From the NCBI RefSeq assembly GCF_003918875.1, contig NW_025767371.1:372001-436000 (forward strand): a stretch of 64,000 nt of DNA. Reading direction: 5' to 3'. Shown in pieces: positions 29,901 to 50,379 of the stretch (position 1 is the stretch's first letter; each line of letters begins with the position of its first letter). The notes beneath the pieces were generated by a model. That model was given only the letters and a program-made list of their open reading frames with translations, did no database searches and had not been told where the DNA came from. The position numbers and the translations under genes are program-made. This DNA comes from Haliotis rubra. Lineage: Eukaryota.

Positions 29901-30844
29901 TACCAAAAGACCTTAAAATATGGTACTTGTTGGTCCCTGCCTGGCGCTCGGCATTAATTGGTACAAGGACTGGTCGGTTCGGAGTCAGTATAATGTGTCT
30001 GAGTGGGGTATTCGTGCTTCACTGCGGCATGGTATCTCAGAGGGCTAGCACTATAAAACCAGCTTTAGTCTGGGCTGGTACAAGCAGCCGCACATACACA
30101 TACACACTCATGCACGTGGTCATATGAGCGAAATATTTTCAAGCACCACTTAAACCCAATTTCACCTCACCACAAAGATGTGTTAACTTATAGTCAGAAA
30201 CACACAGAAGAGTCCTACAATCACACCTTCCACAGACATCTCCTTATAAGAAACATGATTCTTATTGAATCAAATTACTTCAGCAGCAATGACCCCAGCT
30301 CGTTCCCTTGGACATATAAACCTGTCTTCATCAGTTTATTGGTCTTTATAAACTGAACGTAGTGTGTCGTCGTGTTCCCAAGAGAGCAACCAGTAAATAA
30401 GTGGGTGATACCATGACCAAGCCATGCAAGCAAGTGGTTGCCACCCTCAACAGCCACACAAGCAAGTGATTGATACCATGGAACAGATGAGTGTACCAGT
30501 GATTGCTATGAACAAGCATGTGAGAAGGTGGTCGACCTCACTAACAAATGACTGTTACTATAAACACTGACTGACTGACTGAGTTTGGTTTTACGCCGCT
30601 TTTAGCAATATTCCAGCAACATCACGGCGGGGGGACACCAGAAATGGGCTGCACACATTGTACCCATGTGGGGATTCGAACCCGGGTCTTCGGCGTGACG
30701 AGCCAACGCTTTAACCATTAGGCTACCCCACCGCCCCGTTACTATAAACAACCATTGCAACCTTGTGGTTGATGCTATGAACAGCCATGCCAGCAAGTGC
30801 CTGACAGCATGAACAATCAGAAAATGAGATGGAAACATTTATAT

Positions 30845-31160
30845 ATATACAAAATGCCTTTATTACAATAGTCACAATGTACATGACACAATGAGAGGCT
30901 TCAGCATGAGAGAATGAAAACCATAAAAATATAAAAGACTGAGGTATTAGGATAATAATAAGCCGCCAGCAGGGTGTCACAAAACATACACAGTAGTTCC
31001 CAGAAATGCCACCAGGTGGGCAGGTCACATGACCCTGGTCAGTATACTCAGGTCCGGAGATTCATCAAGTACACATCATGGTGCCTCGTCTGTGGCAGGT
31101 CTCGGATCACTGGTGTAGTTATGTGGAAACACTGGCACTGGCAGCCATAAACAGGGACAG
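30845..31160 (-). other. Non-coding terminal exon of PRXL2B (carries SECIS and polyA signal)
   Basis: Donor AG|GTAC 3 nt after the stop (intron starts 32723); acceptor ttttcAG at 31161-31167; AATAAA on the minus strand at 30859-30864. The 3' end is approximate. Confidence 0.7.
31030..31090 (-). promoter_or_regulatory. SECIS element (type II-like) in the 3' UTR of PRXL2B
   Basis: Minus strand reads AUGAU-GUGUACUUG-AUG-AA-UC(UCCG)GA-CC-UGAGUAUAC-UGAC. It has the AUGA/GA core (31079-31075 and 31041-31038), a 9-bp helix II, AA 12 nt after the core and an apical mini-stem. It lies downstream of an in-frame UGA. Confidence 0.85.
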
Positions 31161-31560
31161 CTGAAAATAGAGGCATCACTTAAGAAATACTTATAAAATT
31201 CGAAATAATTTCTGATAAAAAACAGTTTTTAACTAACCACAAACAAGACAAATGGGGCAGATATGGCAGATCTTATTTTTAAAATTTCAAGTGAAAAAGT
31301 AAGCAGACACTTTGTATGAGCAATGATTAAGACTGCCCATTGTACAGCGCAATATGGGAATATTGTACATTCCTTTGCTTGTTGCTTCACTCAGGAATAT
31401 TTCAGCTATATGGCGTCTGTCATCAACAATATGCACATGTGATACGATGACGATGACGTGTGTCTATCAAGTCACCAGGCCTGACCACCCGATCCCGTTA
31501 GTCGCCTCTGACCCGGATCTTCACGGGTCCATTGTACATTCAGTGAGACCATTGCAAACT

Positions 31561-32690
31561 TACAGAACTGTTGTACACTGGACAATACAGAACTGTTGTA
31601 CACTGGACAATGCAGAACTGTTGTACACTCGACAATGCAGAACTGTTGCACACTCACCAATACGGAACTGTTGTACATCGACAATGCAGAACTGTTGTAC
31701 ACTCGACAATGCAGAACTGTTGCACACTCACCAATACGGAACTGTTGTACAACGACAATACAGAACTGTTGTACAACGACAATACAGAACTGTTGTACAC
31801 TTGACAATACAGAACTGTTGTACACTCACCAATACAGAACTGTTGTACACATGACAATACAGAACTGTTGTACAACGACAATACAGAACTGTTGTACACA
31901 TGACAATACAGAACTATTGTACACTGGACAATACAGAACTGTTGTACACTGGACAATACAGAACTGTTGTATACATGACAATACACAACTGTTGTACATT
32001 GACAATGCAGAACTGTTGTACGGCTCACGACAATGCAGAACTGTTGCACACTCACCAATACGGAACTGTTGTATAACGACAATACAGAACTGTTGTACAA
32101 CGACAATACAGAACTGTTGTACATGGACAATACAGAACTGTTGTACACTGGACAATACAGAACTGTTGTACACATGACAATACTGAACTGTTGTACACTC
32201 AACAATACAGATCTGTTGTACACATGATAATACAGAACTGTTGTACACTCATCAATACTGAACTGTTGTACATCGGCAAAACAGAACTGTTGTACACTCG
32301 ACAATACAGAACTGTTGTACATCGGCAAAACAGAACTGTTGTACACTCGACAATACAGAACTATGAAATACACAATGCCATTTAGAAAGTGGTCAAATGT
32401 AACATATGATATATTTGGGATTACACTTTCTTTGTAAAGTACAGATCCTAGTATTTTGTTGGATTGAGTAGAAGCCGCAGTGGCTGAGCGGTCCAGGCGT
32501 CTGACTTTGTGTGCTGGCCATTAGGTGCCAGACTCTGAGGGTGTGGGTTCGAATCCCGGATGGGACTCAACCCAACAAAGTACTAGAATCTGTACTTAAC
32601 AAAGAAAGTGTAATCCCAAAAATAACATATGTTAAATACAGAACAGTTGTACACTGGACAATACAGAACTGTTGTACACTCAACAATGCT
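31561..32690. repeat. 23-26 bp minisatellite in the 3'-UTR intron of PRXL2B
   Basis: (acaatacagaactgttgtacacNNN)n, split by the SINE pair at 32364-32635. Confidence 0.95.
32364..32635. mobile_element. Head-to-head pair of a tRNA-like SINE forming an inverted repeat
   Basis: tRNA-like head 32474-32557 (TGGCTGAGCGG, GGTTCGAATCCC) flanked by inverted body arms at about 32401-32469 and 32565-32633. A single copy lies at about 3843-4035 (-). Confidence 0.65.
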
Positions 32691-32726
32691 GGACCATTGG
32701 AATAAAACAATATGGTACTGTACCTG

Positions 32727-35700
32727 TTATTTCATCTGGCAGACATCACCCTCACACTGAACCTCTGGCTTGGGCTTGTCCTTCTTAGGCATCTCACAAA
32801 CATCGTCCTTGCACGTCACCTCCGTTCCCCCACTTGCCTCGCCACCATCAGCCGTCACCTGAGTTCCCTCCCCATCTGTAGATACCATCTTTTCCACATC
32901 AACGGTGCCCTCGATGCCCAACGCTTTCAACACTTCGTTTGGGTCCACATGATCAGCTGGGTTTTCCTGCTTGAAGTTGAGCAGTACCTTGCCTCCTGAA
33001 GTGAATCACGCATGGTTCTTAAAATATCCTTCAATATGTTCATTGTTTCTAATTCCACAAACAATTCTAAAACCAGAACTTCTGATATTTCAAGCACCTG
33101 TTAGTGTGAACTTTCATGGTCATTCACATCAATTTTCATTCAGTTCTTATATTTTCATTTTTGTTGATATCATTTTAACGTTATGTTTATCTTCCCTAGT
33201 TGGTGTATCTCGATCAACCAAAGTTTCGCTTCCGCATATCAGCCATATTTAAATGAATAGAGTCTGATCTTACTGAGGACAGTAAATATAACATTTTGAA
33301 AATGAAAACACGAACAAGGCTATACAAACAATACAGGGCTACACAAACAATACAAGGCAACACAAACAATACAAGGCTACGCTATACAAACAATACAGGG
33401 CTACACAAACAATACAAGGCTACACAAACAATACAAGGCTACACAAACAATACAGGGGTACACAAACAATACAGGGCTACACAAACAATACAAGGCTACA
33501 CACACAATACAAGGCTACACAAACAATACAAGGCTACACAAACAATACAAGGCTACACACACAATACAAGGCTACACACACAATACAAGGCTACACAAAC
33601 AATACAAGGCTACACACACAATACAAGGCTACACAAACAATACAAGGCTACACAAACAATACAAGGCTACACAAACAATACAAGGCTACACACACAATAC
33701 AAGGCTACACAAACAATACAAGGCTACACACACAATACAAGGCTACACAAACAATACAAGGCTACACACACAATACAAGGCTACACACACAATACAAGGC
33801 TACACAAACAATACAAGGCCACTACACAAACAATACAAGGCTACACAAAACAATACAAGGCTACACACACACATACAAGGCTACACAAACAATACAAGGC
33901 TACACACACAATACAAGGCTACACACACAATACAAGGCTACACACACAATACCTTTAGCAACCACTACTGTGCCCCCGTTCTGCATCCCATCACCCTTGA
34001 AGTTTCCTTCAATCTTCTCAGTCTTTGCCTGGAAGGAATTGGGTCTTACATAAGTTGGACACTACTTCTGTTATAAGTATTACTGTTGTATTGCTCATCC
34101 GTGGAAGATACTGCAGTGTTATAAGTTTACGGCAATATTACACTAGTGTAATACTGTTAGATGTATGACGTCATAATGGTTTACAGTTATGACGTCACAA
34201 TGCTAATACCTGTCACAATAGTATTAGACCTTGCTTGATTAGCGGAAAGCTGAGAGTCATCACACTGTTGGCAGTTTCTATCAATTTATGTTGGAGAGAA
34301 ATAAACAGAACACTAAACTTGCTTCTGTGAAATACCATTTTTATTAAACTTGTGGAAGATTTGGTATCAAACCTGATTTCGCTTATTTAATACCAAATCA
34401 ACAACTCATTTAATAAAAGTCGTACTGTACAGAAGTTCGGTTCGTATTCTCTATATTTCACAAAAGAAATAGATACAGTATCTCCACTGGTGGCAAAATT
34501 ATTGATACGATGTTTCAGCAAGTTTGGGTGCGACATTTATCAAATCATCCAGACAATGCTATGATTGGTTTCAGATTTAAAAAACCTTCCTCGTCATACA
34601 TGGAATAAGTCAAGCATTGTATATGTGCAAGAGTTAGCAGGATAGGAACAGTGAATGATAGATCAGGTGAGCTTAAGATTTCATCTCCGATGAAATCATC
34701 ATGACAATTATGAACAGGATATTTGCTGCCTCACTGCTTGTATTTAACAGCACAAGCATTTCAACACATGCTTTCTTCGGGGTAATATTCCCAATACAAC
34801 CACAGCTGGTGTATAACAGAATATACTTCAGGCATGTGTATCACGCAGACCAGATACTGGAATCACAGCCAGGTTAATATAATAATAATAATGTCAAACC
34901 AATATCACACAGCTGGTGTATAACAGAATATACTACATGCGTATCAAGCAGACCAGATACTGGAATCACAGCCAGGTTAATATAATAATAATAATGTCAA
35001 ACCAATATCACACAGCTGGTGTATAACAGAATATACTACATGCGTATCAAGCAGACCAGATACTGGAATCACAGCCAGGTTAATATAATAATAATAATGT
35101 CAAACCAATATCACACAGCTGGTGTATAACAGAATATACTACATGCGTATCAAGCAGACCAGATACTGGAATCACAGCCAGGTTAATATAATAATAATAA
35201 TGTCAAACCAATATCACACAGCTGGTGTATAACAGAATATACTACATGCGTATCAAGCAGACCAGATATTGGCATCACAGCCAGGTTAATATAATAATAA
35301 TAATGTCAAACCAATATCACACAGCTGGTGTATAACAGAATATACTACATGCATTATCAAGCAGACCAGATACTGGAATCACAGCCAGGTTAATATAATA
35401 ATAATAATGTCAAACCAATATCACACAGCTGGTGTATAACAGAATATACTACATCGCATTATCAAGCAGACCAGATACTGGAATCACAGCCAGGTTAATA
35501 TAATAATAATAATGTCAAACCAATATCACACAGCTGGTGTATAACAGAATATACTACATGCATTATCAAGCAGACCAGATACTGGAATCACAGCCAGGTT
35601 AATATAATAATAATAAATGTCAAACCAATATCACACAGCTGGTGTATAACAGAATATACTACATGTATCAAGCAGACCAGATACTGGAATCACAGCCAGG

Positions 35701-38700
35701 TTAATATAATAATAATGTCAAACCAATATCACACAGCTGGTGTATAACAGAATATACTACATGCGTATCATAAGACCAGATACTGGAATCACAAGTCAGG
35801 TTAATATAATAATAATAATGTCAAACCAATATCACACAGCTGACCAGGTGTATAACAGAATATACTACCATGCGTATCGCTAAGCAGAATACTACCAGAC
35901 CAGATACTGGAATCACAGCCAGGTTAATATAATAATAATAATGTCAAACCAATATCACACAGCTGGTGTATAACAGAATATACTACATGCGTATCAAGCA
36001 GACCAGATACTGGAATCACAGCCAGGTTAATATAATAATAATAATGTCAAACCAATATCACACAGCTGGTGTATAACAGAATATACTACATGTATCAAGC
36101 AGACCAGATACTGGAATCACAGCCAGGTTAATATAATAATAATAATGTCAAACCAATATCACACAGCTGGTGTATAACAGAATATACTACATGCGTATCA
36201 AAGCAGACCAGATACTGGAATCACAGCCAGGTTAATATAATAATAATAATGTCAAACCAATATCACACAGCTGGTGTATAACAGAATATACTACATGCAT
36301 TATCAAGCAGACCAGATACTGGAATCACAGCCAGGTTAATATAATAATAATAATGTCAAACCAATATCACACAGCTGGTGTATAACAGAATATACTACAT
36401 CGCGTATCAAAGCAGACCAGATACTGGAATCACAGCCAGGTTAATATAATAATAATAATGTCAAACCAATATCACACAGCTGGTGTATAACAGAATATAC
36501 TACATGTATCAAGCAGACCAGATACTGGAATCACAGCCAGGTTAATATAATAATAATAATGTCAAACCAATATCACACAGCTGGTGTATAACAGAATATA
36601 CTACATGCATATCAAGCAGACCAGATACTGGAATCACAGCCAGGTTAATATAATAATAATAATGTCAAACCAATATCACACAGCTGGTGTATAACAGAAT
36701 ATACTACATGCGTATCAAGCCAGACCAGATACTGGAATCACAGCCAGGTTAATATAATAATAATAATGTCAAACCAATATCACACAGCTGGTGTATAACA
36801 GAATATACTACATGCATTATCAAGCAGACCAGATACTGGAATCACAGCCAGGTTAATATAATAATAATAATGTCAAACCAATATCACACAGCTGGTGTAT
36901 AACAGAATATACTACATCGTATCAAGCAGACCAGATACTGGAATCACAGCCAGGTTAATATAATAATAATAATGTCAAACCAATATCACACAGCTGGTGT
37001 ATAACAGAATATACTACATGCATCAAGCAGACCAGATACTGGAATCACAGCCAGGTTAATATAATAATAATAATGTCAAACCAATATCACACAGCTGGTG
37101 TATAACAGAATATACTACATGCGTATCAAGCAGACCAGATACTGGAATCACAGCCAGGTTAATATAATAATAATAATGTCAAACCAATATCACACAGCTG
37201 GTGTATAACAGAATATACTACATGCGTATATCGCTAGACCAGATACCGGAATCACAGTTTCAGGTTAATATAATAATAATAATGTCAAACCAATATCACA
37301 CAGCTGGTGTATAACAGAATATACTACATGAAGTATCAAGCAGACCAGATACTGGAATCACAGCCAGGTTAATATAATAATAATAATGTCAAAACCAATA
37401 TCACACAGCTGGTGTATAACAGAATATACTACATGCATGTGTATCACGCAGACCAGATACTGGAATCACAGCCAGGTTAATATAATAATAATAATGTCAA
37501 ACCAATATCACACAGCTGGTGTATAACAGAATATACTACATGCGTATCAAGCAGACCAGATACTGGAATCACAGCCAGGTTAATATAATAATAATAATGT
37601 CAAACCAATATCACACAGCTGGTGTATAACAGAATATACTACATGCGTATCAAGCAGACCAGATACTGGAATCACAGCCAGGTTAATATAATAATAATAA
37701 TGTCAAACCAATATCACACAGCTGGTGCATAACAGAATATACCACATGCATCGCTAAGACCAGATACCTGAATACTGGAATACAGCCAGGTTATAATAAT
37801 AATAATAATGTCAAACCAATATCACACAGCTGGTGTATAACAGAATATACTACATCAACATCACAGACCAGATACTGGAATCACAGCCAGGTTAATATAA
37901 TAATAATAATGTCAAACCAATATCACACAGCTGGTGTATAACAGAATATACCACATGTATCAAACAGACCAGATACCTGAATCCACAGTCAGGTTAATAT
38001 AATAATAATAATATCAAAACCAATATCACACAGCTGGTGTATAACAGAATATACTACATCGCACGTATCAAGCAGACCAGATACTGGAATCACAGCCAGG
38101 TTAATATAATAATAATAATGTCAAACCAATATCACACAGCTGGTGTATAACAGAATATACTACATGCGTATCAAGCAGACCAGATACTGGAATCACAGTT
38201 TCAGGTTAATATAATAATAATAATGTCAAACCAATATCACACAGCTGGTGTATAACAGAATATATATACATGATCATGACCAGATACCGAATCATTAAGC
38301 CAGGTTAATATAATAATAATAATAATGTCAAACCAACATCACACAGCTGGTGTATAACAGAATATACTACTATGCGATCAAGCAGACCAGATACTGGAAT
38401 CACATTCAGGTTAATATAATAATAATAATGTCAAACCAATATCACACAGCTGGTGTATAACAGAATATACTACATGCGTATCAAGCAGACCAGATACTGG
38501 AATCACAGTTTCCAGGTTAATATAATAATAATAATGTACCAGATACTGGAATCACAGCCAGGTTAATATAATAATAATAATGTCAAACCAACATCACACA
38601 CAGCTGGTGTATAACAGAATATACTACATGCATCAAGCAAGACCCAGATACTGGAATCACAGCCAGGTTAATATAATAATAATAATGTCAAACCAATATC

Positions 38701-41700
38701 ACACAGCTGGTGTATAACAGAATATCCACATCCAATACATGCGTATCAAGCAGACCAGATACTGGAATCACAGCCAGGTTAATATAATAATAATAATGTC
38801 AAACCAATATCACACAGCTGGTGTATAACAGAATATACTACATGCGTATCACGCAGACCAGATACTGGAATCACAGCCAGGTTAATATAATAATTAATGT
38901 CAAACCAATATCACAGCTGGTGTATAACAGAATATACTACATAAGTATCAAGCAGACCAGATACTGGAATCACAGCCAGGTTAATATAATAATTAATGTC
39001 AAACCAATATCACACAGCTGGTGTATAACAGAATATACTAAATGCATTATCAAGCAGACCAGGGTATTGTACATCACAGCTAAGGTGACCGTAACTCCCA
39101 TACTTTAACAAAGACTAAGGTAGCCACACAGGTTGTTTTGTACAACAGATCAGATACTGGAATCACAGCCAGGTTAATACGTCAAACTGGTGCATAAAAC
39201 AGTATAGTACTGACATGAGTATCAAGCAGACCAGTTATTGGAATCTACAACTGGTGAATAACCCTGAGGGTCAGTGTCTAATCAATGGCCTCACCTGTGA
39301 CATGGCATCTCTGGCTTTTTTGGCAAAGATGGCAGGAAATAGACTGAAAACGCCGAGTCTGAAATCACAGAAAGACACAACTGTTTTCGTATGTGAATAG
39401 TGTTAAATGTTCTTAAATCAAGAGTATCACCAGGTGTTAGCCTGATAACAGGTGCAGTCCCCACTTCATCGTAAAAATGAAGAATTTCATACTTAAGAAT
39501 ACCACTGAATTGTATTATTAGTATACCATAAAACACCTAGAAAACAACACTTATTGCAATCTTTTTCCATGTATCGTTATATTTGGTAATGCAAATTTTA
39601 AGCCAAGAAGACTTCCCTAAAACAGCAGAAGTGATCATTCTCTCACATTATCTCCCCAGTGACCATTCTGACTTTGATATCTTAATATTTACTTTAAACC
39701 TTGTGGTTCTGAATACCTGAGCTACCCCATACGTGCTTCCAACCATAATGTTTTTATCTGTTACTTAAATAGACTTTGCTCTGTCGTTTTCTCAACTGCA
39801 ATTTCCTTTGCAGTGAAAATTTGCAGCCTCACTTGTCATCTGTGAATGAACATTTTGTCAGCTCCATGCAGTGGTGTAAGAATTTAGTAATGCTAAATTA
39901 TCAAAATATGTGAAGTGCATCAAGTTATCAAACTTGTGACATGCATAGATCACTTTGCTCTCCTTTACACCACAGAGAAATACTTAGGCCAGACCAATTT
40001 TATTTCTTGTTTTACAGATTTTTGTCCTCAGAAAACCTAAAGGCAGGAGGGAAAAAAATAAAAAAATAAAAATCACCAGTCAAAGTAATATTGCTTTTGC
40101 ATACTAAAAGTATTTTATTTTTGGCAAGTTATGAAGTGTATATGGAGCACAAAAAAATCAAATTTTTGGGGGGTAAGTTTACATTCTTTGCCCATAAAAA
40201 CATGAGGATTTTATTTTTGGAGCGGGGAAATTTTTTTTATATTTTTTTTCTTATTCTTGAAAAAATACGACCAGCAGATCCGTAAAACAAGAAATGAAAC
40301 TGGTCTGGCCTTATTCACTTTCTCACAGTAGGAAAATAACTAAACATGTACAGTGGAACACTTTAACTCCCAATATTACTGACCACAATATGCCTCACAA
40401 TATGGATGCCTGTATTGTAAGATACAACTCCTCTGCCAACACGCAGCCCTCAAAGCCCTGTATAAGCCTCAAAACACTTTCAAATATTCTACCTGTCTAA
40501 TCATGTATGAAAATGTTGTATTATGAGAAATGAAGGTTTTTATGATTGATGTTTTGTTCGTGGTCGATCCTGTGTGCTACAATACACTACATGGGTTATA
40601 GTTCAAATTACTGTTAATCAACACTCCCATCGGACAACCCTCACATGCCTACCTCAGAAAGCAACACCTTATTCAGACAACCCTGCCTACCTTCTGACAA
40701 TGCCTACCTTCGGCAACCAAACCTCAATAAGACAACCATGTGATAGCCTTCTGACAATGTGCCTACCTTCGGCAGCCAAACCTCAATAAGACAACCATCT
40801 GACAACCTTCTGACAATGCCTACCTTCGGCAACCAAACCTCAATAAGACAACCATGTGACAACCTTCTGACAATGCCTACCTTCGGCAGCCAAACCTCAA
40901 TAAGACAACCATGTGACAACCTTCTGACAATGCCTACCTTCGGCAGCCAAACCTCAATAAGACAACCATGTGATAGCCTTCTGACAATGTGCCTACCTTC
41001 GGCAGCCAAACCTCAATAAGACAACCCTGACAACCTTCTGACATGCCTACCTTGCCAAACCTCAATGCCTACCTTCGCAGCCAAACCTCAATAAGACAAC
41101 CATGTGACAACCTTCTGACAATGTGCCTACCTTCGCAGCCAAACCTCAATAAGACAACCATGTGACAATGTGCCTTCTGACAATGTGCCTACCCTTTGAC
41201 AATGACAGCCAAACCCCAATAAGACAACCCTGACAACCTTCTGACAATGTGCCTACCTTCGGAAGCCCAGGTCCTTGTAGCACTGCTTTTTTAGATCTAT
41301 ATACAGTTCTGAAAGAAAACATGAAAAAATCATGGCTTCCATTCAACAAAAACTGAAACTGTAGTGGTGGGGAAGTTGTTGAATGATGTAAGCTGTCAAA
41401 CAGAATAATCACTGTACCCTTACATGGTTGGTTGGTTGTTGTTAAATGCCGCACTCAGCAACGTTCCAGAGATATGGTGGCGGTCTGAACCAGACAATCC
41501 AGAGACCAACACTGGACCCCCCAACCCCCACAAAGGCTGTGAAGCAATATATAGGCTGTCCTAAAAGATCAATAATCAGAAATATTGTCGATGGGAAGAA
41601 TTATTAATGATTATAAATAAGAAAATTGCGTCATCAATAATATCTTTAATAAACTGTTGTTATGGAATAAACTTTTAATTTACACACACAATACACAAAT

Positions 41701-44700
41701 GTAAGTATCTGTTCACTGCCACTTTAAAATTATGTTCAGAAAACTGTTCTGCTGCAATCCGCGCATAAGGGTGTCCTCACTCCCCTGTGACATGAAACAT
41801 ATCATTTCTTGCTGACCTTTTGTAAATTCTCTGATATTTATTGATAACCGATTGACATTTAGTTCATGATTATCAATCTGTCTTATCTATATCAACAGCC
41901 AGTACTACGAAATACTTGAGTCTGTTTCCGTGGTATTGGAATGGTCTGAGTTAGTTCAAGTGACTTAATGCCATGCTTTTCTGTTTTCACTTTCAGTCAC
42001 GTGAGTGAGTATGGTTTTATGCCGCTTTTAGCAATATTCCAGCAATATCACGGTAGGGAACACCAGCAATGGGCTTCACACACTGAACCCGGGTCTTTGG
42101 CGTGACTAGCAAACACATTAACCACTAGGCCACCCCACCACCCCTCAGTCACGTGAACCGAACAGTGAATGTTCAAGCTATATTCCTACAGCCTACAACC
42201 CCCATGATGTCATGATCAACAAGTATACATTACAGAGAAAGAAATGCAACTTTTTTAAAGGGTACCATTGGGCACAGACATAATTTACACCTGCCCTTGT
42301 GAAAATAAGCGTGCCCATACCTTTTGATTGTCCAAATAGACTTAAACCATCTCAACAATTACGTCATTTCAATTTATTATTTCTTTAAATAAATCAGTAA
42401 AAATCATGTAAACATCCAAACATGAGAGCCGGGTTTCCTGAACACTATCATGACTGCAAGTAGCAGCTATAGTTCAGCTTCATTTGCGTGTGATTTGCCC
42501 CGATAAACTAACCCACAAACTACGTTACCAAGACATGGGATTCCCTGTTATGCACAGTGGCATTCAAAATGGTCACGCCCTTTATTAAGCTGTGAATATG
42601 AGAATGCCACCGATAAACAGTTTGATGGGCTGCAAAAATAGGTATTGAATCATTTCAGTTTGTCAAATTTATCACATTTTCCAGGGCTCGATTTAGTTTT
42701 TTGTTACTTGCACTGGTGCAACACAATATTACAAAGTGCAACCTAGTTATGAGTCTTATCTTGCACAAGGTGCAAGTCAATTTTTGAGAAATAGATAAAT
42801 AAATCTAACACTATAAGCATAAATATGTCAGCTAATTTTTCTTCTAAACTTTGAATAGCTATGGCACTGAAATATTGCTATTCATATACACGTTTCGTCT
42901 ATGACAGCTCTTGTAAACAGGGATCAGCTGTGTCTCTGTGTTGCTATGCTTTCATAGGTACTACATCACGGAAATAAGTTTATGTGCACCGAAACCTCTT
43001 GCGTTTTAACACACAACGTTGCAACTGGAATTTTTGCTGGTGCAACTAGGGTTTTATCTTAGGTTGCACCTAGTGCAAGTAGGTTAACCTCTCTTAAATC
43101 GAGCCCTGTTTTCCATTAAATGAATCATGGTGAGTATTATTTTTTAATTTTAGTCGTGTCATCAGGGCACAATGAAAACATATCCACCATGCCATTTCAA
43201 TATTTACTGTGGCATGGCAAATTAAGGACTATTTTGATCCCTCACATAACATGAGAAGTGCTGTTGTCTGTAAACCTGTGATAGGACAGGTATAGAACTG
43301 TATTTTCACATTACAGTCTACAAGTCTTGAACAATGTTGACGTTTCATCATTTGCATCAGAAATTGACATTGTAGATTTTATGCAATATAAATGATTAAA
43401 AATATCTCACCCCCCATTAAAAAACTTCCCTTCCACGAACTCCTCCACCCCTATCTCCTCCAAGCCGATTGCGATCAACCTGACGTTGTTGGCATCCAGC
43501 TGAGGTTTCAAGGTGGAAAGTTGCCTCGCTCCGAGGCGACAGAAAGGTCATCCAAACCTCCGCATAAACGTGATAACACAGGAGCCTTTCTGCCAGAACG
43601 TCTCCAGCGCCACCATCTGACAACAGCAAAACGAGGTTAAACAAATTTAACAGGAATAATCAGAAAGGCAAAAATTTATCGATGTCAACTTCTCTATTGT
43701 TTTTCTTTTTTTCAATCACCTGTTGAAGCCTTCAGCCTTTCGTTGAAGGAGTAAGAATATACTATGAAATGTCATGTTCCTCAAAATAAAGTTGACAACA
43801 ATAAACTCTTGCCTTCTAAATGCCATCCAAAGTAGGAATAATTACGTTTTGTTAACTTTTACATGGCAGTTATGTGACAAGCAACACTGCTATAGGCAAC
43901 AACATCTTTATCAAACACCTGTAACGTCTCTAGGCTAACTTCTTACCCTTCGTATCTGATGACTGATCTTTCGTCTCACGCACACACTTCACGCTACTTA
44001 GCTTTATGGACAAAATCATATGAAATAGCTTGCTTCTGGCAAATGGCCCAACCAACAATAGACATTGGATATGCAGATGTATCAGTTACCATGGTTACTT
44101 TGTATCCCTTTTATAACCATTTATCATATACATGATCATGATGATATAGACATTTTTCAAGGATAAACAGAGGTTATTGCATGAGTGTGTGTGTGTACAC
44201 AAGGATATACTCAGGGATTTATAGCATGCGATTCCTGTGTCCTATACTCATAAAATTTGACAATGGACGCAACACAATTTATTAGCGCGTCCACAGGGAC
44301 GCAGAAAAAGTCCAAATACTTTCTGTAACAATTCCGATCAAGAGACAATAAGGTATCACTGAGTTTGCTACTACTTGGGTTGTGGTATTAATTGCAATTT
44401 AATTCCTGTAACAATGTGATGATCATGATACACAATACAATAACAGTATTAATAACAATATTTAAGTGTCTGGGACCCCATGTTTAGGGTATGAGTCCCA
44501 GGGACCTGCAAATACAGGACTCAATCATGTAGATCCCTGTATACTGCATTACTAGATTTAGTTTCATAACCCTTTTATCATATAATATTGTTATCAAATA
44601 TATATATCAGCAAAATAGGTCAATTAGTACAGCTGGCAGACAGATGAACTTATCGCTGACAAAGCTGAAACGTTACGCAAGCAATTGTCATTTTGCATTT

Positions 44701-47700
44701 ATCACTGTATATGGGAGTTAAGTCACTGTCGAAATGACAGGGTTTCATGGGGACAACACTGTCATGGTTTGACTGTCAATCAGTGATGTGACGCCATACA
44801 TCAATATGCACGATCCAGCATACTACAAACAGGGTTTTACATAACTCTTCCGAAACTGGGAGTCCTGGAGAATCAGCGCATATGTATTCTGAGAGTCCAT
44901 TTCCAAAATTGGGAGTCCATTAATTTGCATGAAATCAATGATCATGGATGCTTCCCTTTTGATAAAGATTAGGTTATAATATGTGTTACTTTCAATGTCA
45001 TTGAAATAATGATTGTAAACATAATGTTTATATGTATTGTGGGACATCACTTATTCAATACAAACTCATAAAGTTATTCCCATAATTTTTTTTTATTGCA
45101 TCCACAAGGATGCAGGATTTTAGTTTAGGGGTACTTCATCATATTTCTACGTCCAATACGCAGGAATCCTCCGTCCCGTAAAACCCTGTACAAAGTCAAC
45201 TTTGTCTCACGGGTATGTGATGGTTATCAGATAAATATGGTCACGGCAGACAGGGCATGCACAGATACTGAACAAAGATGCCATTATCGTTATATCTTCT
45301 ATAAAGATCATGACAGAGAGATCATATAAAGTCCTGAAACATCAAAATTCAGCAGCAAATACAGATTTGACTACCAAATGTATTAGCACTCCAAACCTAT
45401 TGCACTGAATAAACAATTCAGTGCTAACAGTGCTGTATTCCCCATTCCGCTCTGGATACAGTTACATACTCGAGTGGCACTTGTAAACTGTGGTATGACA
45501 AATGAATTTCAACTTCCTTCATTGAGACCTTTTGAGTGGAGTAGCAGCCATACTGTAATTCACAAATAAGTTGAAATTTGTAATCCCTGTCTTCAGTAGA
45601 GTTTTGTTTTAAACATATTTTATTTACAAAATGATTGGGTACAATTTCTCAAAGCTACGAGACCTTCTCTGACACATGCTCTTTAAATATTAATACCAGT
45701 GACATAAAACCTTGTTTGTGGTTAGACCTGCACAAGTGTCTAAGGTTTGTGGTTTCAGATCTCATTTTAAGTAACTACTGTAATAACTAAGGCTGTTACG
45801 ATTCACTCGCATATTCAGTGAATCGAACCGTAGCCCTTCATGAATTCAATTCGTTATTCGTGGCCACCAGAACCGAATATTCATGAATATTTACAATTTT
45901 TTTAAAGGTGTCCCTTTTACTTGAACCCTTATGTCCTTTTTCAAAATGAGATATGCAAGAATGAAATATGTACTAGCCTTGTAGTACCGCAAGTCATGTT
46001 AGTTTTCCAAGGCCACACATGTTACTGTCAGCTATAAGATTAGATACCAAATTTGAGTGTCATGAGATCACTGGTTATTGCTGTGACAAATTAACACAGT
46101 CAACTTTGGCATTTAATATTGTGCATCAATCACTTAACTTCAATATTGTATTCATGAATAATTATTTGTATTAGTTACCCAATATTCGTGATACGTATCA
46201 TATTCGCCACACAGTGTATTCGTTACAGCCCTAGTAATAACCTTAAATAAACCATAAGAAATAACAGAAGCTATGGCAAACACAAGATCAAATACCATGA
46301 TGAAACATACAATGTTATCGATGAAAACTTCTTATTTATTGCATAAAGCGACATTTGATGTAGATCCTTACATGTAAATAAATAAGAAGTTGTCATCCAT
46401 AAAATTATATATTTAATTTTTGAGTCATCAATTTCTAAAATGCTGATCAAACAATTAAAATACAATGATTCACTCCTAGTTGCTGTTGTGCTACCAAACC
46501 AAGGACCTTAACCTGAGGAGTAGTGAGTGAGGTTAGTTTTATGCCGCTTCTAGCAATACTCCAGCAATATCACGACAGGGGACACCAGAAATGGGTTTCA
46601 CACATTGTACCCATGCGGGGAATTGAACCGTGGTCTTCAGCGTGACGTGCAAACGCTTTAACCACTAGGCTACCCCACCCACATACAACAACAGAATCCT
46701 GGCTAGTCCAAGGGACACGATTCTGCACATCAAAATTGTAGTGCATGTGGCCTAGCTGGGGTATTACTAGTCTGTCGTACAGACCCTGAAGCAAATATAT
46801 CCAAGAAAGCCCACGCTAGTCTAGAAAACGTGGCAAGTCTAGATTTCCTCAGCTTCAGAAAATGAAGAAAGTCTCAGGGCTCTTTTCATTATATTATATT
46901 TTTACTATGAACTTTTTTCAGTAAAATATGTTCATTTCAGAGACTAGTTGTTAGTCTAGGGTATTACTGCAAAGCTCCACCCAGTCGACATGAAATCAGC
47001 ACCATGTACTGGTGATAAACATTCTAGTCTACAAGATTTGGGGAAAAACAATTTTTTTCTCCTTCTTTCACTCCCAGCGGGCTTGAGATCCTATTGATTA
47101 CAGTTGCATGCTAGAAAACATGGTGCATATCGTCTCACATGTGTCCTTGAGCTACTCCTATAAACAATTTCTCGTGACCTGATTACTGTATACAACACTA
47201 TGTGACAGAAAGAACTGTGTTGGAAATAGAACATAACAGTAAAAGTGTCTGTGTTACAACTCCAATGTGACAGGGGTTGAAGGGGTGGGCCTGTCCGGAA
47301 TCTGGGCAAATGCTATGGCATCAAAGTTGACAGGTCTTGGGTGATAAACCTTTTCAAACAAGTCACTCTCTTGAACTGGGGTCGATTCTGTGAGGTTAAT
47401 TTATGCACTGTTTCAGTGAGTTTTACACTGCTTTTCGCAATATTCCAGCAATATCATGGTAAGGGACACTAGAAATGGACTTCACACATTGTACCCATGT
47501 GGGGAATCGAACCCGGGTATTTGGTGTGACAAGCGAACGCTTTAACCACTAGGCTACCCCACCACCCTATGTGCACGGTATGAAGTAAACAAGTTCCAAT
47601 TCAGAGAAGTATTTCAAGATCCAAGCAAACATGAGCTAACTGTTATGGCTGCCTTTGATTTACGAGTGATATGCCTACATAGACAGTAACTCTGTAAGTG

Positions 47701-50379
47701 GTGACAATCATGGCCTACATAGTTAACCTTCAAGAGGCGGGGCTCTTGTGAGTAATGTTTATATTGTCAGGAGGATTTGTGAATAACACTCCTAAATGTT
47801 AGAATTCAATCCTGTTAACTAAATAAACAGGAAACATGCTGCATTTCTGTGAAGACGCACACTGGATAATTGGGCGCTGCACAATGCATCACGCAGATTG
47901 CGGTCAAGGATGGGAAGGATGGAGACGGAAGCTGAGTCAACCTGGATCTATGCAGTTAATGTGGTCTACAGTGGTATCAAAGTCATTAAATGGCATTTAG
48001 AAGAAATACACGTAAAGCAGAAAATATCCCAACACGAGCTGAATTCAACATTCTGGTGATTTCGACGATTGCATTGCACGCGCTATCGGGGGAGTATGTG
48101 TGCGATCAGAGTGCACAAACAGTTTCACTGGTAGGGTGGTTGCCCAGTTGCTGTCGTGAGAAACTATTGACAATGGAAATCGAGAAGTAAAGTTATATAA
48201 AAAGCAAACAAACATTGATATTAAACTATTGAAATATGATCTGTTTGACTGGAATTTTAGAATGACGAATGGTAAGGAAGGTATGATGCTTTCTGGATGA
48301 CAACTTTAGTACCTAACTCGTTAGGATGTGAAAGCCACAACTTGGTGGGCCTTGTGGCTGTAAGAGTTGTATACTCCCTAGGGAGTTGAGATTGATAATA
48401 TGATGTGCCGTTAAGACTGACACCTAATGATCGAGGGAAAAAACACCAGCGACCTGAGCATGCACAAGTTGCCTGGACATGTGCGCTATATAAATATCCC
48501 ATAATATAAAGAAGTATAATTATGATGCAAGGTTTTGGTATAGATTCTTATACTGATTTCTTAGTTAACAACGGTATAAGAATCGATACCAAAATGTTGC
48601 ATCATGATATCATGAAGGAGTTGTCATCCATATAGTACCCTACCTTTCTCAGGAAAATGATGTTGTGGAGTATGAAGAAAACTACAATGCAGATAGTTAT
48701 ATAAGAGCATTTGAAATAACAACAGTGATGAGGAACAAAGCTGGATGATTAACAAGGGAAGCTGGCAGTAAAATATCTGCTGACTGGTAATGTCAAAGAG
48801 AAACCAGGAATATTTCAGGAGTAAATAGTCCTGATAGGAAAGGGGGATGGGGATGGGGGTTGAGCTGTGGGGCAGGTGTTACTGGATTGATTGGTGACAG
48901 TCAAAACAAGGAACCCAGCACACACACAAAAAAAAAATCAGTAAATGCAAGGCAGATAGGTTACCTGGTGATAGTTGATTGCAAGTTGGGACCTCCTGAT
49001 GTCTATGTGAATATACTTATATGCTTATGGGTAAAATTATATATTCAGAGACTAAGCATTAGTCTAAGCCATAACCTGCAACCTTTATTCACATAACAGA
49101 GTAATCAGAAATTTTTCATCTGTATATGACGGTGAAGAAATCATCAAGACTGGACCAGACATGCCAGTGATTTCCATTGTGACAAAGGGTATAGGGAGGC
49201 ATTGGGGGAGGGTCTGTAGCGGGGCTGGCTTCACCACCCTGATTTTACATCTGATTGTATGCATGTACCATCGTGTTTCCTATCATGATAACATCGTGAT
49301 AACCTGGGGCTCTTCTCAAGAAGCAACCTTTACTAAGGTTAACCTTAACTCCCATTCTTTAACATTGCACTAAGGTGAGGTGAGGTGAAATTGGGTTTAA
49401 CGTTGTGCTTGAGAATATTTCGCTCATATGACAACGTGTATGCGTGTGTAAGTGTAGGTACAGCTGCTTGTACTAGCCCAGACTGAAGCTGGTTTTATAG
49501 TGCTAGCCCACTGAGATACCATGCCGCAGTGAAGCATGAATACCCCACTCAGACACATTATACTGACTCCGAGCCGACCAGTCCTTGTTGTACCCATTAA
49601 TGCCGAACGCCAGACAGGGACCAACAAGTACCATATTTTAACGTCTTTTGGTATGACGCGGTCTGGGATCGAACACACGACCTTCTGCTCTCCGGGCAGA
49701 CGCTCAAACCACTACACCACTGAGGCGGTCTTACACTAAGGTTACCATAGTGACTTACATTCACGTTTGTGCTTTGTGAAAGGAGGCCCTGGTAGTTACA
49801 GTACTGGCTAGCGAACAGTTATCGCCACGTAACAGGTATCGCCAATACATTAGTATCACACATGCGCAGAAAATTAATTCGGTTTCATTAAGTCAACGAA
49901 CGGCTGAGTAATTTTGTAAATAGCTCTAAAATATGGCAATAACTGTTGGGTAGCCAGTACAGTTATTGATAGTTTATGTGACATGTATACATTGTATTTG
50001 TGAATTTGGTGTATTAATTTGGGATGGATTTTTAAAATCCTGCAGCGACCCCTGCACCCGGTGCGTTAGATAATCAGCTGAATCTCTCTGGATGTACATG
50101 TTCAATGGCAAGATCGTTACATAAAACTAAAATAATCCCCAGAAAAACATGAGATGCGTTTTGGTGAATATAAAACCACTAGCGCGTCTCAGAATAAACG
50201 CAGGTTTAGTTCAATCCCAAGTTAATACTGTATGAACGAAAATAATCATCATTATCGTCGCGATAGATTTTAACACCTTATATAACATCGCATTCTGAGT
50301 CTTGCATGCATATTATTAAACTTACCTCTTTCGATTCAACGCTTTTGACAGCATTTTTAGCAATCTTAGAGACGTCCAT
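32727..50379 (-). CDS. PRXL2B: Peroxiredoxin-like 2B / prostamide-prostaglandin F synthase (FAM213B, SelU family), selenocysteine form with UxxC, about 239 aa
   Basis: Coding exons 50379-50326 (Kozak ccaccATGg; MDVSKIAKNAVKSVESKE), 43616-43411 (FMRRFG-UGA-PFCR...VRLIAIGLEEIGVEEFVEGKFFNG), 41308-41257 (ELYIDLKKQCYKDLGFR), 39358-39295, 34028-33953 (GNFKGDGMQNGGTVVVAKG), 32995-32727 (KVLLNFKQENPADHV...). Collinear, from recall, with vertebrate PRXL2B (LRRFGCVVCR...GELYLDESKQLYKELGFKR...GDLLQSGG). One surplus G at the exon 2 donor breaks the frame (see findings). Confidence 0.9.
33313..33952. repeat. 19-bp minisatellite
   Basis: (caatacaaggctacacaMa)n, ending at the exon 5 donor. Confidence 0.95.
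34795..39240. repeat. 103-bp satellite array (about 41 copies, 4.3 kb) in PRXL2B intron 4
   Basis: Unit cacagctggtgtataacagaatatactacatgcgtatcaagcagaccagatactggaatcacagccaggttaatataataataataatgtcaaaccaatatca; period measured from 34912 to 35015. Confidence 0.97.
39987..40310. mobile_element. MITE with about 35-bp TIRs and TTA target duplication (PIF/Harbinger-like)
   Basis: ggccagaccaattttatttcttgttttac ... gtaaaacaagaaatgaaactggtctggcc, with TTA on both sides. Confidence 0.75.
40690..41268. repeat. 57-59 bp minisatellite overlapping the PRXL2B exon 3 donor
   Basis: (tgcctaccttcggcagccaaacctcaataagacaaccatgtgacaaccttctgacaa)n, about 10 copies. Confidence 0.95.
42682..43108. mobile_element. 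Non-autonomous hAT-like element, 14-bp TIR, 5-bp TSD
   Basis: cagggctcgattta ... taaatcgagccctg flanked by ttttc; subterminal tgcaac/tgcacc repeats. Confidence 0.7.
44212..45188. mobile_element. Two non-autonomous CAGGG...CCCTG elements with 6-bp TSDs
   Basis: 44212-44539 (TSD tatact) and 44830-45188 (cagggttttac/gtaaaaccctg, TSD tacaaa). Confidence 0.65.
45788..46233. mobile_element. Non-autonomous hAT element with 8-bp TSD
   Basis: taaggctgttacgatt ... attcgttacagcccta flanked by gtaataac on both sides. Confidence 0.75.

What the first reader, a model, noticed from the sequence alone, without database searches (positions are those of the whole stretch)
43411..43616. Hidden selenoprotein: PRXL2B with UGA-encoded Sec in a UxxC motif
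TGA at 43550-43548 (codon 41) falls exactly where vertebrate PRXL2B has the first Cys of its CxxC (RRFG-U-PFC versus RRFG-C-VVC). Homology continues through four more exons and a SECIS is present. The ORF track misses this frame, and automated annotation would probably truncate the gene or call it a pseudogene. Established: the SelU family mixes Sec and Cys forms, and mammalian PRXL2B is a Cys enzyme. Inference: a selenium-dependent prostaglandin/prostamide F synthase-like reductase in this animal.
Basis: partly seen in the sequence, partly recalled or inferred. Interest (0 to 1): 0.75.

Follow-up and report, generated by a model that had tools for sequence, protein, structure and literature searches.

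The report
Abalone selenocysteine PRXL2B (SelU3) gene
This is a real, expressed blacklip-abalone gene for a prostaglandin-F-synthase-like redox enzyme that uses selenocysteine (encoded by UGA) where the human enzyme has its catalytic cysteine. Public annotation cuts the gene off at that codon, but the same selenium form was already described in another gastropod in 2012.

Summary
The window is the Haliotis rubra assembly GCA_003918875.1. On its minus strand lies a six-coding-exon gene for a 239-residue PRXL2B/SELENOU3-type protein.

Evidence that the UGA encodes selenocysteine:
- Codon 41 is TGA (43550-43548). It sits in RRFG-U-PFC, exactly where human prostamide/prostaglandin F synthase has Cys44 of RRFG-C-VVC.
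- The TGA is kept in H. rufescens, in another gastropod contig and in arthropod-like transcripts.
- Between the two abalone species, codons on both sides of the TGA change mostly synonymously.
- A spliced contig from a run guessed to be RNA carries the TGA.
- One AUGA..AA..GA hairpin, the only such pattern match in 128 kb, lies on a 3' non-coding exon and is conserved in H. rufescens. No Rfam SECIS model matches it.

One flaw was missed. The assembly has six G at the exon 2 donor, which breaks the frame. The RNA-type contig and H. rufescens indicate five, so this is probably a homopolymer error.

A Sec-form SelU3 was already reported for the gastropod Lottia in 2012. This is therefore a new member of a known kind, mainly useful for fixing the annotation. 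The scan earlier noted other abalone selenoproteins in the same genome.

The parts
50326..50379 (-). Coding part of exon 1: ccaccATGG start, 18 codons (MDVSKIAKNAVKSVESKE), donor GAG|gtaagt, phase 0. By contig arithmetic the 5'UTR reaches about 50472.
   Evidence: tblastn of N-termini of relatives; sequence. Versus H. rufescens: 5 synonymous and 1 non-synonymous codon changes. The RNA-type contig has 145 letters upstream of its exon 2 match.
43411..43616 (-). Exon 2, as given in the finding. Acceptor ttgtcag|ATGGTG. In the mRNA it ends at 43412.
   Evidence: Contigs X11 record 16 and X17 record 24 match 43618-43412 only.
43548..43550 (-). TGA, codon 41: the inferred selenocysteine codon. It is followed by Pro-Phe-Cys, with the Cys codon TGT at 43541-43539, giving a UxxC motif.
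   Evidence: Aligned with Cys44 of human PGFS. Conserved in H. rufescens, the gastropod contig L001 and transcript contigs L004, L006, L008 and L009.
43410..43415 (-). Run of six G at the exon 2 donor. Five are expected (AATGGGG|GTGAG). The extra G breaks the frame between exons 2 and 3.
   Evidence: H. rufescens has five G; L001 is phase 1. The RNA-type contig ends at 43412. DNA contig X1 record 8 has one gap somewhere in 43115-43800, position not shown.
41257..41308 (-). Exon 3 (E)LYIDLKKQCYKDLGFR(R), 52 nt.
   Evidence: X11 depth in bin 41230-41315 equals 52 letters of the 38.2-depth contig.
39295..39358 (-). Exon 4 LGVFSLFPAIFAKKARDAMSQ, 64 nt.
33953..34028 (-). Exon 5 AKTEKIEGNFKGDGMQNGGTVVVAK(G), 76 nt.
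32727..32995 (-). Exon 6: GKVLLNFKQENPADHV... plus an acidic tail with two C-x4-C motifs. Stop TAA at 32729-32727. A donor-like CAG|GT follows 3 nt after the stop (GT at 32723-32722).
   Evidence: A donor shortly after the stop is also present in H. rufescens.
30845..31160 (-). Inferred non-coding terminal exon. Acceptor ctattttcag|CTGTCC at 31161/31160. AATAAA at 30864-30859.
Evidence: Sequence. 86% column identity with H. rufescens, with a conserved acceptor and AATAAA. The 1122-nt RNA-type contig has 770 letters after exon 2, against 461 coding letters, which leaves about 309 for the 3'UTR and fits 3 + about 306 nt of this exon (arithmetic only).
31039..31079 (-). SECIS-like hairpin: AUGA-U, a 9-bp helix (GUGUACUUG/UGAGUAUAC), a 15-nt apical loop AUGAAUCUCCGGACC with AA 13 nt after the core, then U-GA.
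   Evidence: Pattern scans. MFE folding recovers the helix. Conserved in H. rufescens with structure-compatible changes. Rfam is negative.

Best explanation
This is the blacklip abalone orthologue of PRXL2B / SELENOU3 (prostamide/prostaglandin F synthase family, thioredoxin fold). It is a 239-residue protein whose codon 41 UGA is decoded as selenocysteine.

Shown here:
- The UGA occupies the position of the catalytic Cys44 of the human enzyme, inside a conserved Arg-Arg-Phe-Gly-[U/C]-x-x-Cys motif.
- It is conserved in orthologues.
- It is flanked on both sides by coding sequence under purifying selection.
- It is present in a spliced transcript-type contig.

Inferred:
- A SECIS hairpin on a separate 3' non-coding exon recruits the Sec-insertion machinery so that the ribosome reads through the UGA.
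- The selenolate of Sec41 attacks a peroxide or endoperoxide substrate (PGH2 or prostamide H2 in the vertebrate enzyme).
- A selenenylsulfide then forms with Cys44 and is reduced by a thioredoxin/NADPH system.
- The six-G run at the exon 2 donor is most likely a homopolymer error of the assembly, not a lesion in the gene.
For: Position and homology of the UGA:
- In-frame TGA in RRFG-U-PFC.
- The downstream part matches human PGFS 9US9 over residues 47-186 with E = 2.6e-36. PGFS reads RRFGCVVCR at the aligned place.
- Cys44 is the residue placed to attack the PGH2 peroxide, and Arg40/Arg41 are strictly conserved (PMC12938796). Abalone keeps Arg-Arg.

Conservation of the UGA:
- Present in H. rufescens, in gastropod contig L001 and in transcript contigs L004, L006, L008 and L009, where the upstream ORF runs in the same frame.
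- Many database relatives show W at this place, or start just after it. These are gene-caller artefacts of a TGA.
- Cys forms also exist (P0014, P0022, P0031, P0041).

Selection, H. rubra against H. rufescens:
- 11 synonymous and 3 non-synonymous codon changes upstream of the TGA.
- 27 and 5 downstream.

Expression:
- The 1122-nt contig of run X11 covers the exons only, with zero depth in the flanking intron bins. It has 0 differences over exon 2, so it holds the TGA, and it joins exon 2 after four G, which is in frame.

SECIS:
- It is the only AUGA..AA..GA site with a helix II of at least 9 bp in 128 kb. It lies on the right strand, downstream of the stop. Expectation is 0.63 per 64-kb strand.
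- The H. rufescens copy differs by G-U to G-C at the top of the helix and U.U to C.C at the N.N pair next to the core. The loop is unchanged.
- Elements of the same architecture lie behind the relatives' genes in L005 and L009.

Annotation:
- RefSeq models in three Haliotis species start at the codon after the TGA.
Against: - No Rfam SECIS model matches the hairpin, even in a 161-nt search at E up to 10. The same scan also misses the best SECIS-like hairpins of a relative (L004), so the model set seems insensitive here.
- The folding energy of the hairpin is unremarkable (z = 0.42 and -0.31), and helix I is weak.
- The pattern thresholds were tuned after I had seen the candidate.
- The assembly as written has a +1 frame break at the exon 2 donor. 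I could not see where the single gap of the DNA contig lies.
- Runs X11 and X17 are only guessed to be RNA.
- No protein-level evidence for Sec exists.
- Placement in the PRXL2B branch rather than the PRXL2A or PRXL2C branch rests on best matches and names, not on a tree.
Confidence: 0.87

Rival explanations
1. The H. rubra copy is a frameshifted pseudogene or null allele. The sixth G at the exon 2 donor is real, so the product is out of frame after residue 86.
For: The assembly reads GGGGGGT at 43415-43409. With the only GT donor, exon 2 is 206 nt, one too many. A look-up of an ORF spanning the run found no independent contig, which is uninformative.
Against: - A spliced contig with 0 differences over exon 2 joins exon 3 after four G, which is in frame.
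- H. rufescens has five G.
- The RefSeq H. rubra model reads FFNGELYIDL without a low-quality flag.
- DNA contig X1 record 8 is one letter shorter than the window over 43115-43800.
- All exons are intact and match the H. rufescens protein closely.
Confidence: 0.07
2. The TGA is an ordinary stop. Only a 40-residue peptide is made, or the functional protein starts downstream as in the RefSeq partial models, without selenocysteine.
For: RefSeq models start after the TGA. Rfam finds no SECIS.
Against: - The product would lack the catalytic residue and the first strands of the fold.
- Codons upstream of the TGA are under purifying selection in the same frame (11 synonymous, 3 non-synonymous), and they are homologous to the N-termini of full-length Cys forms.
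- No ATG follows the TGA closely.
- The TGA is conserved from gastropods to arthropod-like transcripts at the Cys44 position.
Confidence: 0.03
3. It is a selenoprotein but belongs to the SELENOU1/PRXL2A branch, the only branch in which a 2026 survey found Sec forms, and not to PRXL2B.
For: PMC13134290 states that all Sec-encoding SELENOU genes in its data set were SELENOU1. No tree with PRXL2A and PRXL2C anchors was built here.
Against: - Full-length match to human PGFS/PRXL2B at E = 2.6e-36.
- The RRFG-x-xxCR and ELY.D...Y..LGF+R blocks are shared with PGFS.
- NCBI names all close relatives prostamide/prostaglandin F synthase(-like).
- Jiang et al. list Lottia, Capitella and Nematostella Sec forms as SelU3, which they equate with the prostamide/PGF synthase group.
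Confidence: 0.04

Closest known systems
Lottia gigantea SelU3 (Lg.SelU3) and other invertebrate Sec-form SelU3 proteins (Jiang et al. 2012, PMC3473315)
   Same: It is a Sec-containing member of the prostamide/PGF synthase subfamily of SelU in a gastropod, predicted from an in-frame UGA plus a SECIS. In that paper all Cys forms of SelU3 were deuterostome.
   Different: It comes from a different gastropod lineage. I did not compare the sequence with Lg.SelU3, because no tool result gave me that sequence. The abalone gene has a long acidic tail with two C-x4-C motifs, and its SECIS-like element lies on a separate non-coding exon.
Human prostamide/prostaglandin F synthase, PRXL2B/SELENOU3 (PDB 9US9/9USA; PMC12938796)
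   Same: It has the thioredoxin-like AhpC-TSA_2 fold. It aligns over about 140 residues at E = 2.6e-36. Both share the Arg-Arg-Phe-Gly-[C/U]-x-x-Cys active site and an S/N-Pro-x-D motif near the C-terminus.
   Different: Human has Cys44 where abalone has UGA/Sec41. The dipeptide inside the motif is Val-Val in human and Pro-Phe in abalone. Abalone has a C-terminal extension of about 55 residues. The substrate in abalone is untested.
Fish and bird SELENOU1 (PRXL2A-type selenoprotein U)
   Same: It belongs to the same SelU/Prx-like2 family, with Sec at the first position of UxxC and a mixture of Sec and Cys forms across lineages.
   Different: It is a different paralogue branch (SELENOU1/PRXL2A). 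A tree was not built here, so the separation rests on best matches and on the literature.

Membership tests
Eukaryotic selenoprotein gene (UGA-Sec plus SECIS) | In-frame UGA aligned with Cys (or Sec) in homologues at a redox-active site | tested here: met
   The TGA at 43550-43548 aligns with Cys44 of human PGFS and with Cys in P0014, P0022, P0031 and P0041.
Eukaryotic selenoprotein gene (UGA-Sec plus SECIS) | UGA conserved in orthologues, with coding conservation on both sides | tested here: met
   The TGA is present in H. rufescens, L001, L004, L006, L008 and L009. Synonymous/non-synonymous codon changes are 11/3 upstream and 27/5 downstream.
Eukaryotic selenoprotein gene (UGA-Sec plus SECIS) | SECIS element in the 3'UTR (AUGA core, helix II, unpaired AA, GA) | tested here: inconclusive
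   A consensus-pattern match at 31079-31039 is the only one in 128 kb, and it is conserved with compatible changes in H. rufescens. No Rfam SECIS model hits it, helix I is weak, and the folding z-score is about 0. SECISearch3 was not available.
Eukaryotic selenoprotein gene (UGA-Sec plus SECIS) | Transcript carries the UGA and is spliced in frame | tested here: met
   Contig X11 record 16 (1122 nt) has 0 differences over exon 2, covers exons only, and joins exon 3 after four G. That the run is RNA is a guess, supported by the exon-only coverage.
Eukaryotic selenoprotein gene (UGA-Sec plus SECIS) | Selenium actually incorporated at the UGA | not testable with these tools
   This needs 75Se labelling, mass spectrometry or ribosome profiling.
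PRXL2B / SELENOU3 (prostamide/prostaglandin F synthase) | Prx-like2 (AhpC-TSA_2) thioredoxin-fold domain | tested here: met
   PF13911 matches the 45-residue exon piece (28.8 bits against a cut-off of 27). It is also recorded for P0165 and P0166.
PRXL2B / SELENOU3 (prostamide/prostaglandin F synthase) | Arg-Arg-Phe-Gly-C-x-x-C active-site block, with Arg40/Arg41 next to the CxxC | tested here: met
   Abalone has MRRFG-U-PFCR and human has LRRFGCVVCR.
PRXL2B / SELENOU3 (prostamide/prostaglandin F synthase) | Groups with PRXL2B rather than PRXL2A or PRXL2C in a phylogeny | not tested
   No tool result gave me PRXL2A or PRXL2C sequences. Support comes only from the PDB best match, from NCBI names and from Jiang et al..
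PRXL2B / SELENOU3 (prostamide/prostaglandin F synthase) | Reduces PGH2 or prostamide H2 to the F2alpha form | not testable with these tools
   This needs an enzyme assay.

The most novel reading that the evidence does not exclude
The abalone enzyme is a true selenium-dependent prostaglandin H2 reductase. It would tie selenium status and peroxide tone to the prostaglandin pathway through which hydrogen peroxide triggers abalone spawning. It would also show that Sec, not Cys, is the ancestral and still widespread state of the PRXL2B/SELENOU3 branch in protostomes, contrary to the 2026 statement that all Sec-encoding SELENOU genes in that survey's data set were SELENOU1.
Probability: 0.2. Interest if true: 0.5.

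Novelty: new member of a known kind. Interest (0 to 1): 0.22.

Why it matters
- **Annotation.** RefSeq proteins of three abalone species (XP_046547532.1, XP_046335662.2, XP_071111752.1) lack the first 41 residues, including the catalytic selenocysteine. Many public predicted proteins of this family show a false Trp at that place or start just after it.
- **Assembly.** The case points to a probable 1-nt homopolymer error in the H. rubra assembly.
- **Evolution.** It adds a gastropod data point for Sec use in the PRXL2B branch. One paper reports Sec forms in that branch (2012), and a recent survey found none in its own data set (2026).
- **Aquaculture.** Abalone are farmed with selenium-supplemented feed and spawned with peroxide, so a selenium-dependent prostaglandin-pathway enzyme would have practical interest. 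That function is untested.

Tried and rejected
- **Rfam.** I scanned the whole window at gathering score, then 38500-46000, 29000-33100 and 30980-31140 at E up to 10. No SECIS family matched. The same kind of scan on a relative's 3'UTR (L004) also found none, so I gave this negative little weight.
- **First exon 1 candidate.** ATG 43775 with a donor at 43720 was rejected because it ends in phase 2, while exon 2 needs phase 0. The true exon 1 was found at 50379-50326 with relatives' N-termini.
- **Structural alignment of SECIS-like elements.** MAFFT misaligned the five elements, so no covariance model was built.
- **L001.** The locus ended before exon 6. A look-up of a downstream ORF failed because the contig had been called with TGA read as Trp. 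A clean 40-residue ORF extended the locus as L005.
- **G run.** A look-up of the 82-residue plus-strand ORF spanning the run found nothing on record, which is uninformative.
- **L010.** This turned out to be genomic DNA of a H. rufescens-like species, not mRNA.
- **Gap in DNA contig X1 record 8.** The output does not show its position. The listed 1-nt omission at 43182 lies in a repeat-rich bin and may belong to other contigs.
Full report
**What is in the sequence**

Read on the minus strand, 43616-43411 is an exon bounded by ttgtcag| and |gtgaga. It translates as MVALETFWQKGSCVITFMRRFG*PFCRLGARQLSTLKPQLDANNVRLIAIGLEEIGVEEFVEGKFFNG, with TGA at 43550-43548.

The 45 residues after the TGA pass the Pfam gathering score for AhpC-TSA_2. 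Their best solved relative is human prostamide/prostaglandin F synthase, PDB 9US9. Stop-to-stop reading of the minus strand, followed by inspection of the splice sites, gives four further coding exons:
- 41308-41257
- 39358-39295
- 34028-33953
- 32995-32727, ending in TAA at 32729-32727

Exon 1 was found with the N-termini of full-length relatives. It lies at 50379-50326 and encodes MDVSKIAKNAVKSVESKE, 18 codons behind ccaccATGG, with donor gtaagt in phase 0.

**Identity of the window and state of public annotation**

The locus fetched for the RefSeq protein XP_046547532.1 is letter-for-letter the window's minus strand. It comes from Haliotis rubra, GCA_003918875.1, contig QXJH01000662.1.

That protein, and its counterparts in H. 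rufescens (XP_046335662.2) and H. cracherodii (XP_071111752.1), are all named "prostamide/prostaglandin F synthase-like, partial". All three begin with PFCRLGARQ, the codon right after the TGA. Each window exon peptide downstream of the TGA is an exact substring of the H. rubra protein.

**Is the TGA a selenocysteine codon?**

Five lines of evidence bear on this.

1. *Position.* The H. rubra partial protein aligns with human PGFS residues 47-186 at E = 2.6e-36. A sea-urchin Cys form aligned with the same chain shows RRFGCPICR over RRFGCVVCR. The abalone RRFG-TGA-PFC therefore puts the TGA on Cys44. The structure paper for 9US9/9USA places Cys44 next to the PGH2 peroxide and calls Arg40/Arg41 strictly conserved (PMC12938796). 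Abalone keeps Arg-Arg.

2. *Conservation.* The TGA is present at the same place in:
   - H. rufescens.
   - A 29.7-kb gastropod-like contig from ENA, with nearly the same neighbouring codons.
   - Transcript-type contigs from metatranscriptomes and Logan assemblies, where the upstream ORF with a full N-terminus runs in the same frame into ...RRFG*[LV]FCRQ.

   In the 1.8-billion-protein library, 178 proteins match the 45-residue piece. Among the 33 whose sequences I read, many show W at the site or begin just after it. Contig L001 was indeed called with TGA read as Trp. Cys forms also occur.

3. *Selection.* Between H. rubra and H. rufescens, exon 1 plus the pre-TGA part of exon 2 show 11 synonymous and 3 non-synonymous codon changes. 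The post-TGA exons 2b to 5 show 27 and 5. Both sides are therefore translated in this frame.

4. *Expression.* Laying Logan contigs on 41230-43800 gives the following for run X11:
   - A 1122-nt contig matches 43618-43412 with no differences.
   - Depth is zero in the adjacent intron bins.
   - Depth in the exon 3 bin corresponds to 52 letters.

   This is a spliced transcript that holds the TGA. A second species (run X17) gives the same exon limits, with nine differences. The RNA label of both runs is a guess, but the exon-only coverage supports it.

5. *SECIS.* See the section on the SECIS below.

The assembly reads AATGGGGGGTGAGA at the end of exon 2. With the only GT, at 43410-43409, exon 2 is 206 nt and exon 3 falls out of frame. 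Homology needs phase 1, that is AAT GGG G|GT. Four observations point to an error in the assembly rather than in the gene:
- H. rufescens has five G (AATGGGG|GTGAGG).
- The other gastropod has GGA G|gtaaaa.
- Both transcript-type contigs stop matching at 43412, after four G.
- The RefSeq H. rubra protein reads FFNGELYIDL.

A DNA contig of run X1 covers 43115-43800 with no mismatches but one gap. Its position is not shown in the output, and the only listed 1-nt omission nearby, at 43182, lies in a repeat-rich bin. I read the sixth G as a probable homopolymer error (about 85%). A real null allele in the reference animal is not excluded.

**SECIS**

Rfam finds no SECIS anywhere in the window, nor in short stretches at E up to 10. 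A consensus-pattern scan has exactly one hit in both strands of the 64-kb window. The pattern was an AUGA core, at least 9 ungapped pairs of helix II, AA 10-14 nt after the core, a loop of 7-30 nt, and GA. The hit lies at 31079-31039 on the minus strand, against 0.63 expected per 64-kb strand in Markov-2 simulations. The thresholds were tuned after I had seen the candidate, so the true odds are weaker than those numbers suggest.

The hairpin sits in a stretch that looks like a separate non-coding exon:
- A donor-like CAG|GT follows the stop by 3 nt.
- ctattttcag| precedes 31160.
- AATAAA lies at 30864-30859.

The H. rufescens homologue keeps the acceptor, the AATAAA and a donor 9 nt after its stop. 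The length of the X11 contig fits a spliced 3'UTR: 770 letters after exon 2, of which 461 are coding, leaving about 309. That is arithmetic, not a junction read.

Within the hairpin, H. rufescens differs at three places:
- G-U becomes G-C at the top of helix II.
- The two bases flanking the core pair change together from U.U to C.C.
- The 15-nt loop is unchanged.

MFE folding recovers helix II in both species. The energies are ordinary, however, and helix I is weak.

Hairpins of the same build lie behind the relatives' genes in L005 and L009. That build is AUGA-N, 9-12 bp, a 13-17-nt loop and AA at +13. Rfam also reports no SECIS in the 3'UTR of relative L004, where my pattern scan finds such hairpins. 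Its silence here therefore carries little weight. I rate the SECIS as probable, not proven.

**Mechanism**

- Shown: the gene, its frame, the conserved UGA at the catalytic position, and the transcript.
- From established knowledge of the family: Cys44 attacks the endoperoxide and forms a disulfide with Cys47, which is then re-reduced.
- Inferred for abalone: Sec41 does the attack, a selenenylsulfide forms with Cys44 of the abalone numbering, and a thioredoxin system recycles it. Whether the substrate is PGH2 is unknown.

**Comparison with what is known**

SELENOU3 is PRXL2B (PMC13134290). Jiang et al. 2012 equate SelU3 with the prostamide/PGF synthase group. They report it as the most abundant invertebrate SelU group, with all its Cys forms in deuterostomes, and they list Lg.SelU3 for the gastropod Lottia gigantea (PMC3473315). 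The abalone gene is therefore a new member of a described kind.

The 2026 survey states that all Sec-encoding SELENOU genes in its data set were SELENOU1. The Sec forms seen here in gastropod and arthropod-like sequences named PGFS-like sit oddly with that statement. I did not build the tree that would settle the branch.

**Limits**

No full-length fold or full-length search was made.
The 3'UTR junction is therefore unverified.

**Verdict**

Interest is low to moderate. The main value is a corrected annotation, a flagged assembly error, and one more data point for Sec use in the PRXL2B branch.

Noticed in passing
window 40685-41260, minus strand: The exon 3 donor decamer GAAG|GTAGGC (41260-41251) recurs nine more times in the 57-58-nt satellite that fills the start of intron 3 (40675-41261). 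Only 0.05 matches are expected by chance. The satellite seems to have been seeded from the exon/intron boundary, and it places nine decoy donor sequences downstream of the real one.
   Followed up: partly
window 31561-32362, 33314-33952, 34801-39062: Three more tandem arrays lie inside this gene's introns. A 25-nt unit (32 copies) lies in the inferred 3'UTR intron. A 19-nt unit (33 copies) starts right after the exon 5 donor. A 103-nt satellite (about 41 copies, 4.3 kb) lies in intron 4. The H. rufescens gene spans 5.1 kb from the codon after the TGA to the stop, against 10.8 kb here.
   Followed up: partly
window 32730-32870, minus strand (C-terminal tail of exon 6): The tail carries two C-x4-C motifs (CKDDVC and CEGDVC). 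A single C-x4-C or similar pair near the C-terminus recurs in relatives (L005 VCEEDVC, P0022 CNEVTC, P0043 CTEDTC, P0093 CDDAC). This may be a second, conserved redox-active or metal-binding site. Human PGFS ends differently.
   Followed up: no
proteins P0001, P0003-P0005, P0008, P0017, P0020, P0023, P0028, P0029, P0034, P0036, P0039, P0136; loci L001/L005: Many public predicted proteins of this family show RRFGW. The Sec codon was translated as Trp because the contig was called with a TGA=Trp code (all called genes of L001 are clean only under table 4). Others start at the residue after the TGA. This is a systematic database artefact that marks hidden selenoproteins.
   Followed up: partly
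window 30668-30726 (-), 32473-32567 (+), 42001-42175: There are tRNA-derived SINE-like copies. A tRNA-like match of 28.6 bits falls just under the Rfam cut-off, and a weak tRNA-Sec-like match lies on the plus strand inside the 3'UTR intron. The 42004-42089 bin draws by far the greatest contig depth in all four runs laid. This is a high-copy repeat of abalone genomes.
   Followed up: no
literature: PMC13134290 versus PMC3473315: The 2026 vertebrate selenoproteome survey says all Sec-encoding SELENOU genes it detected are SELENOU1. The 2012 metazoan survey lists several Sec-form SelU3 (PRXL2B-type) genes in invertebrates. The sequences seen here agree with the 2012 report.
   Followed up: partly
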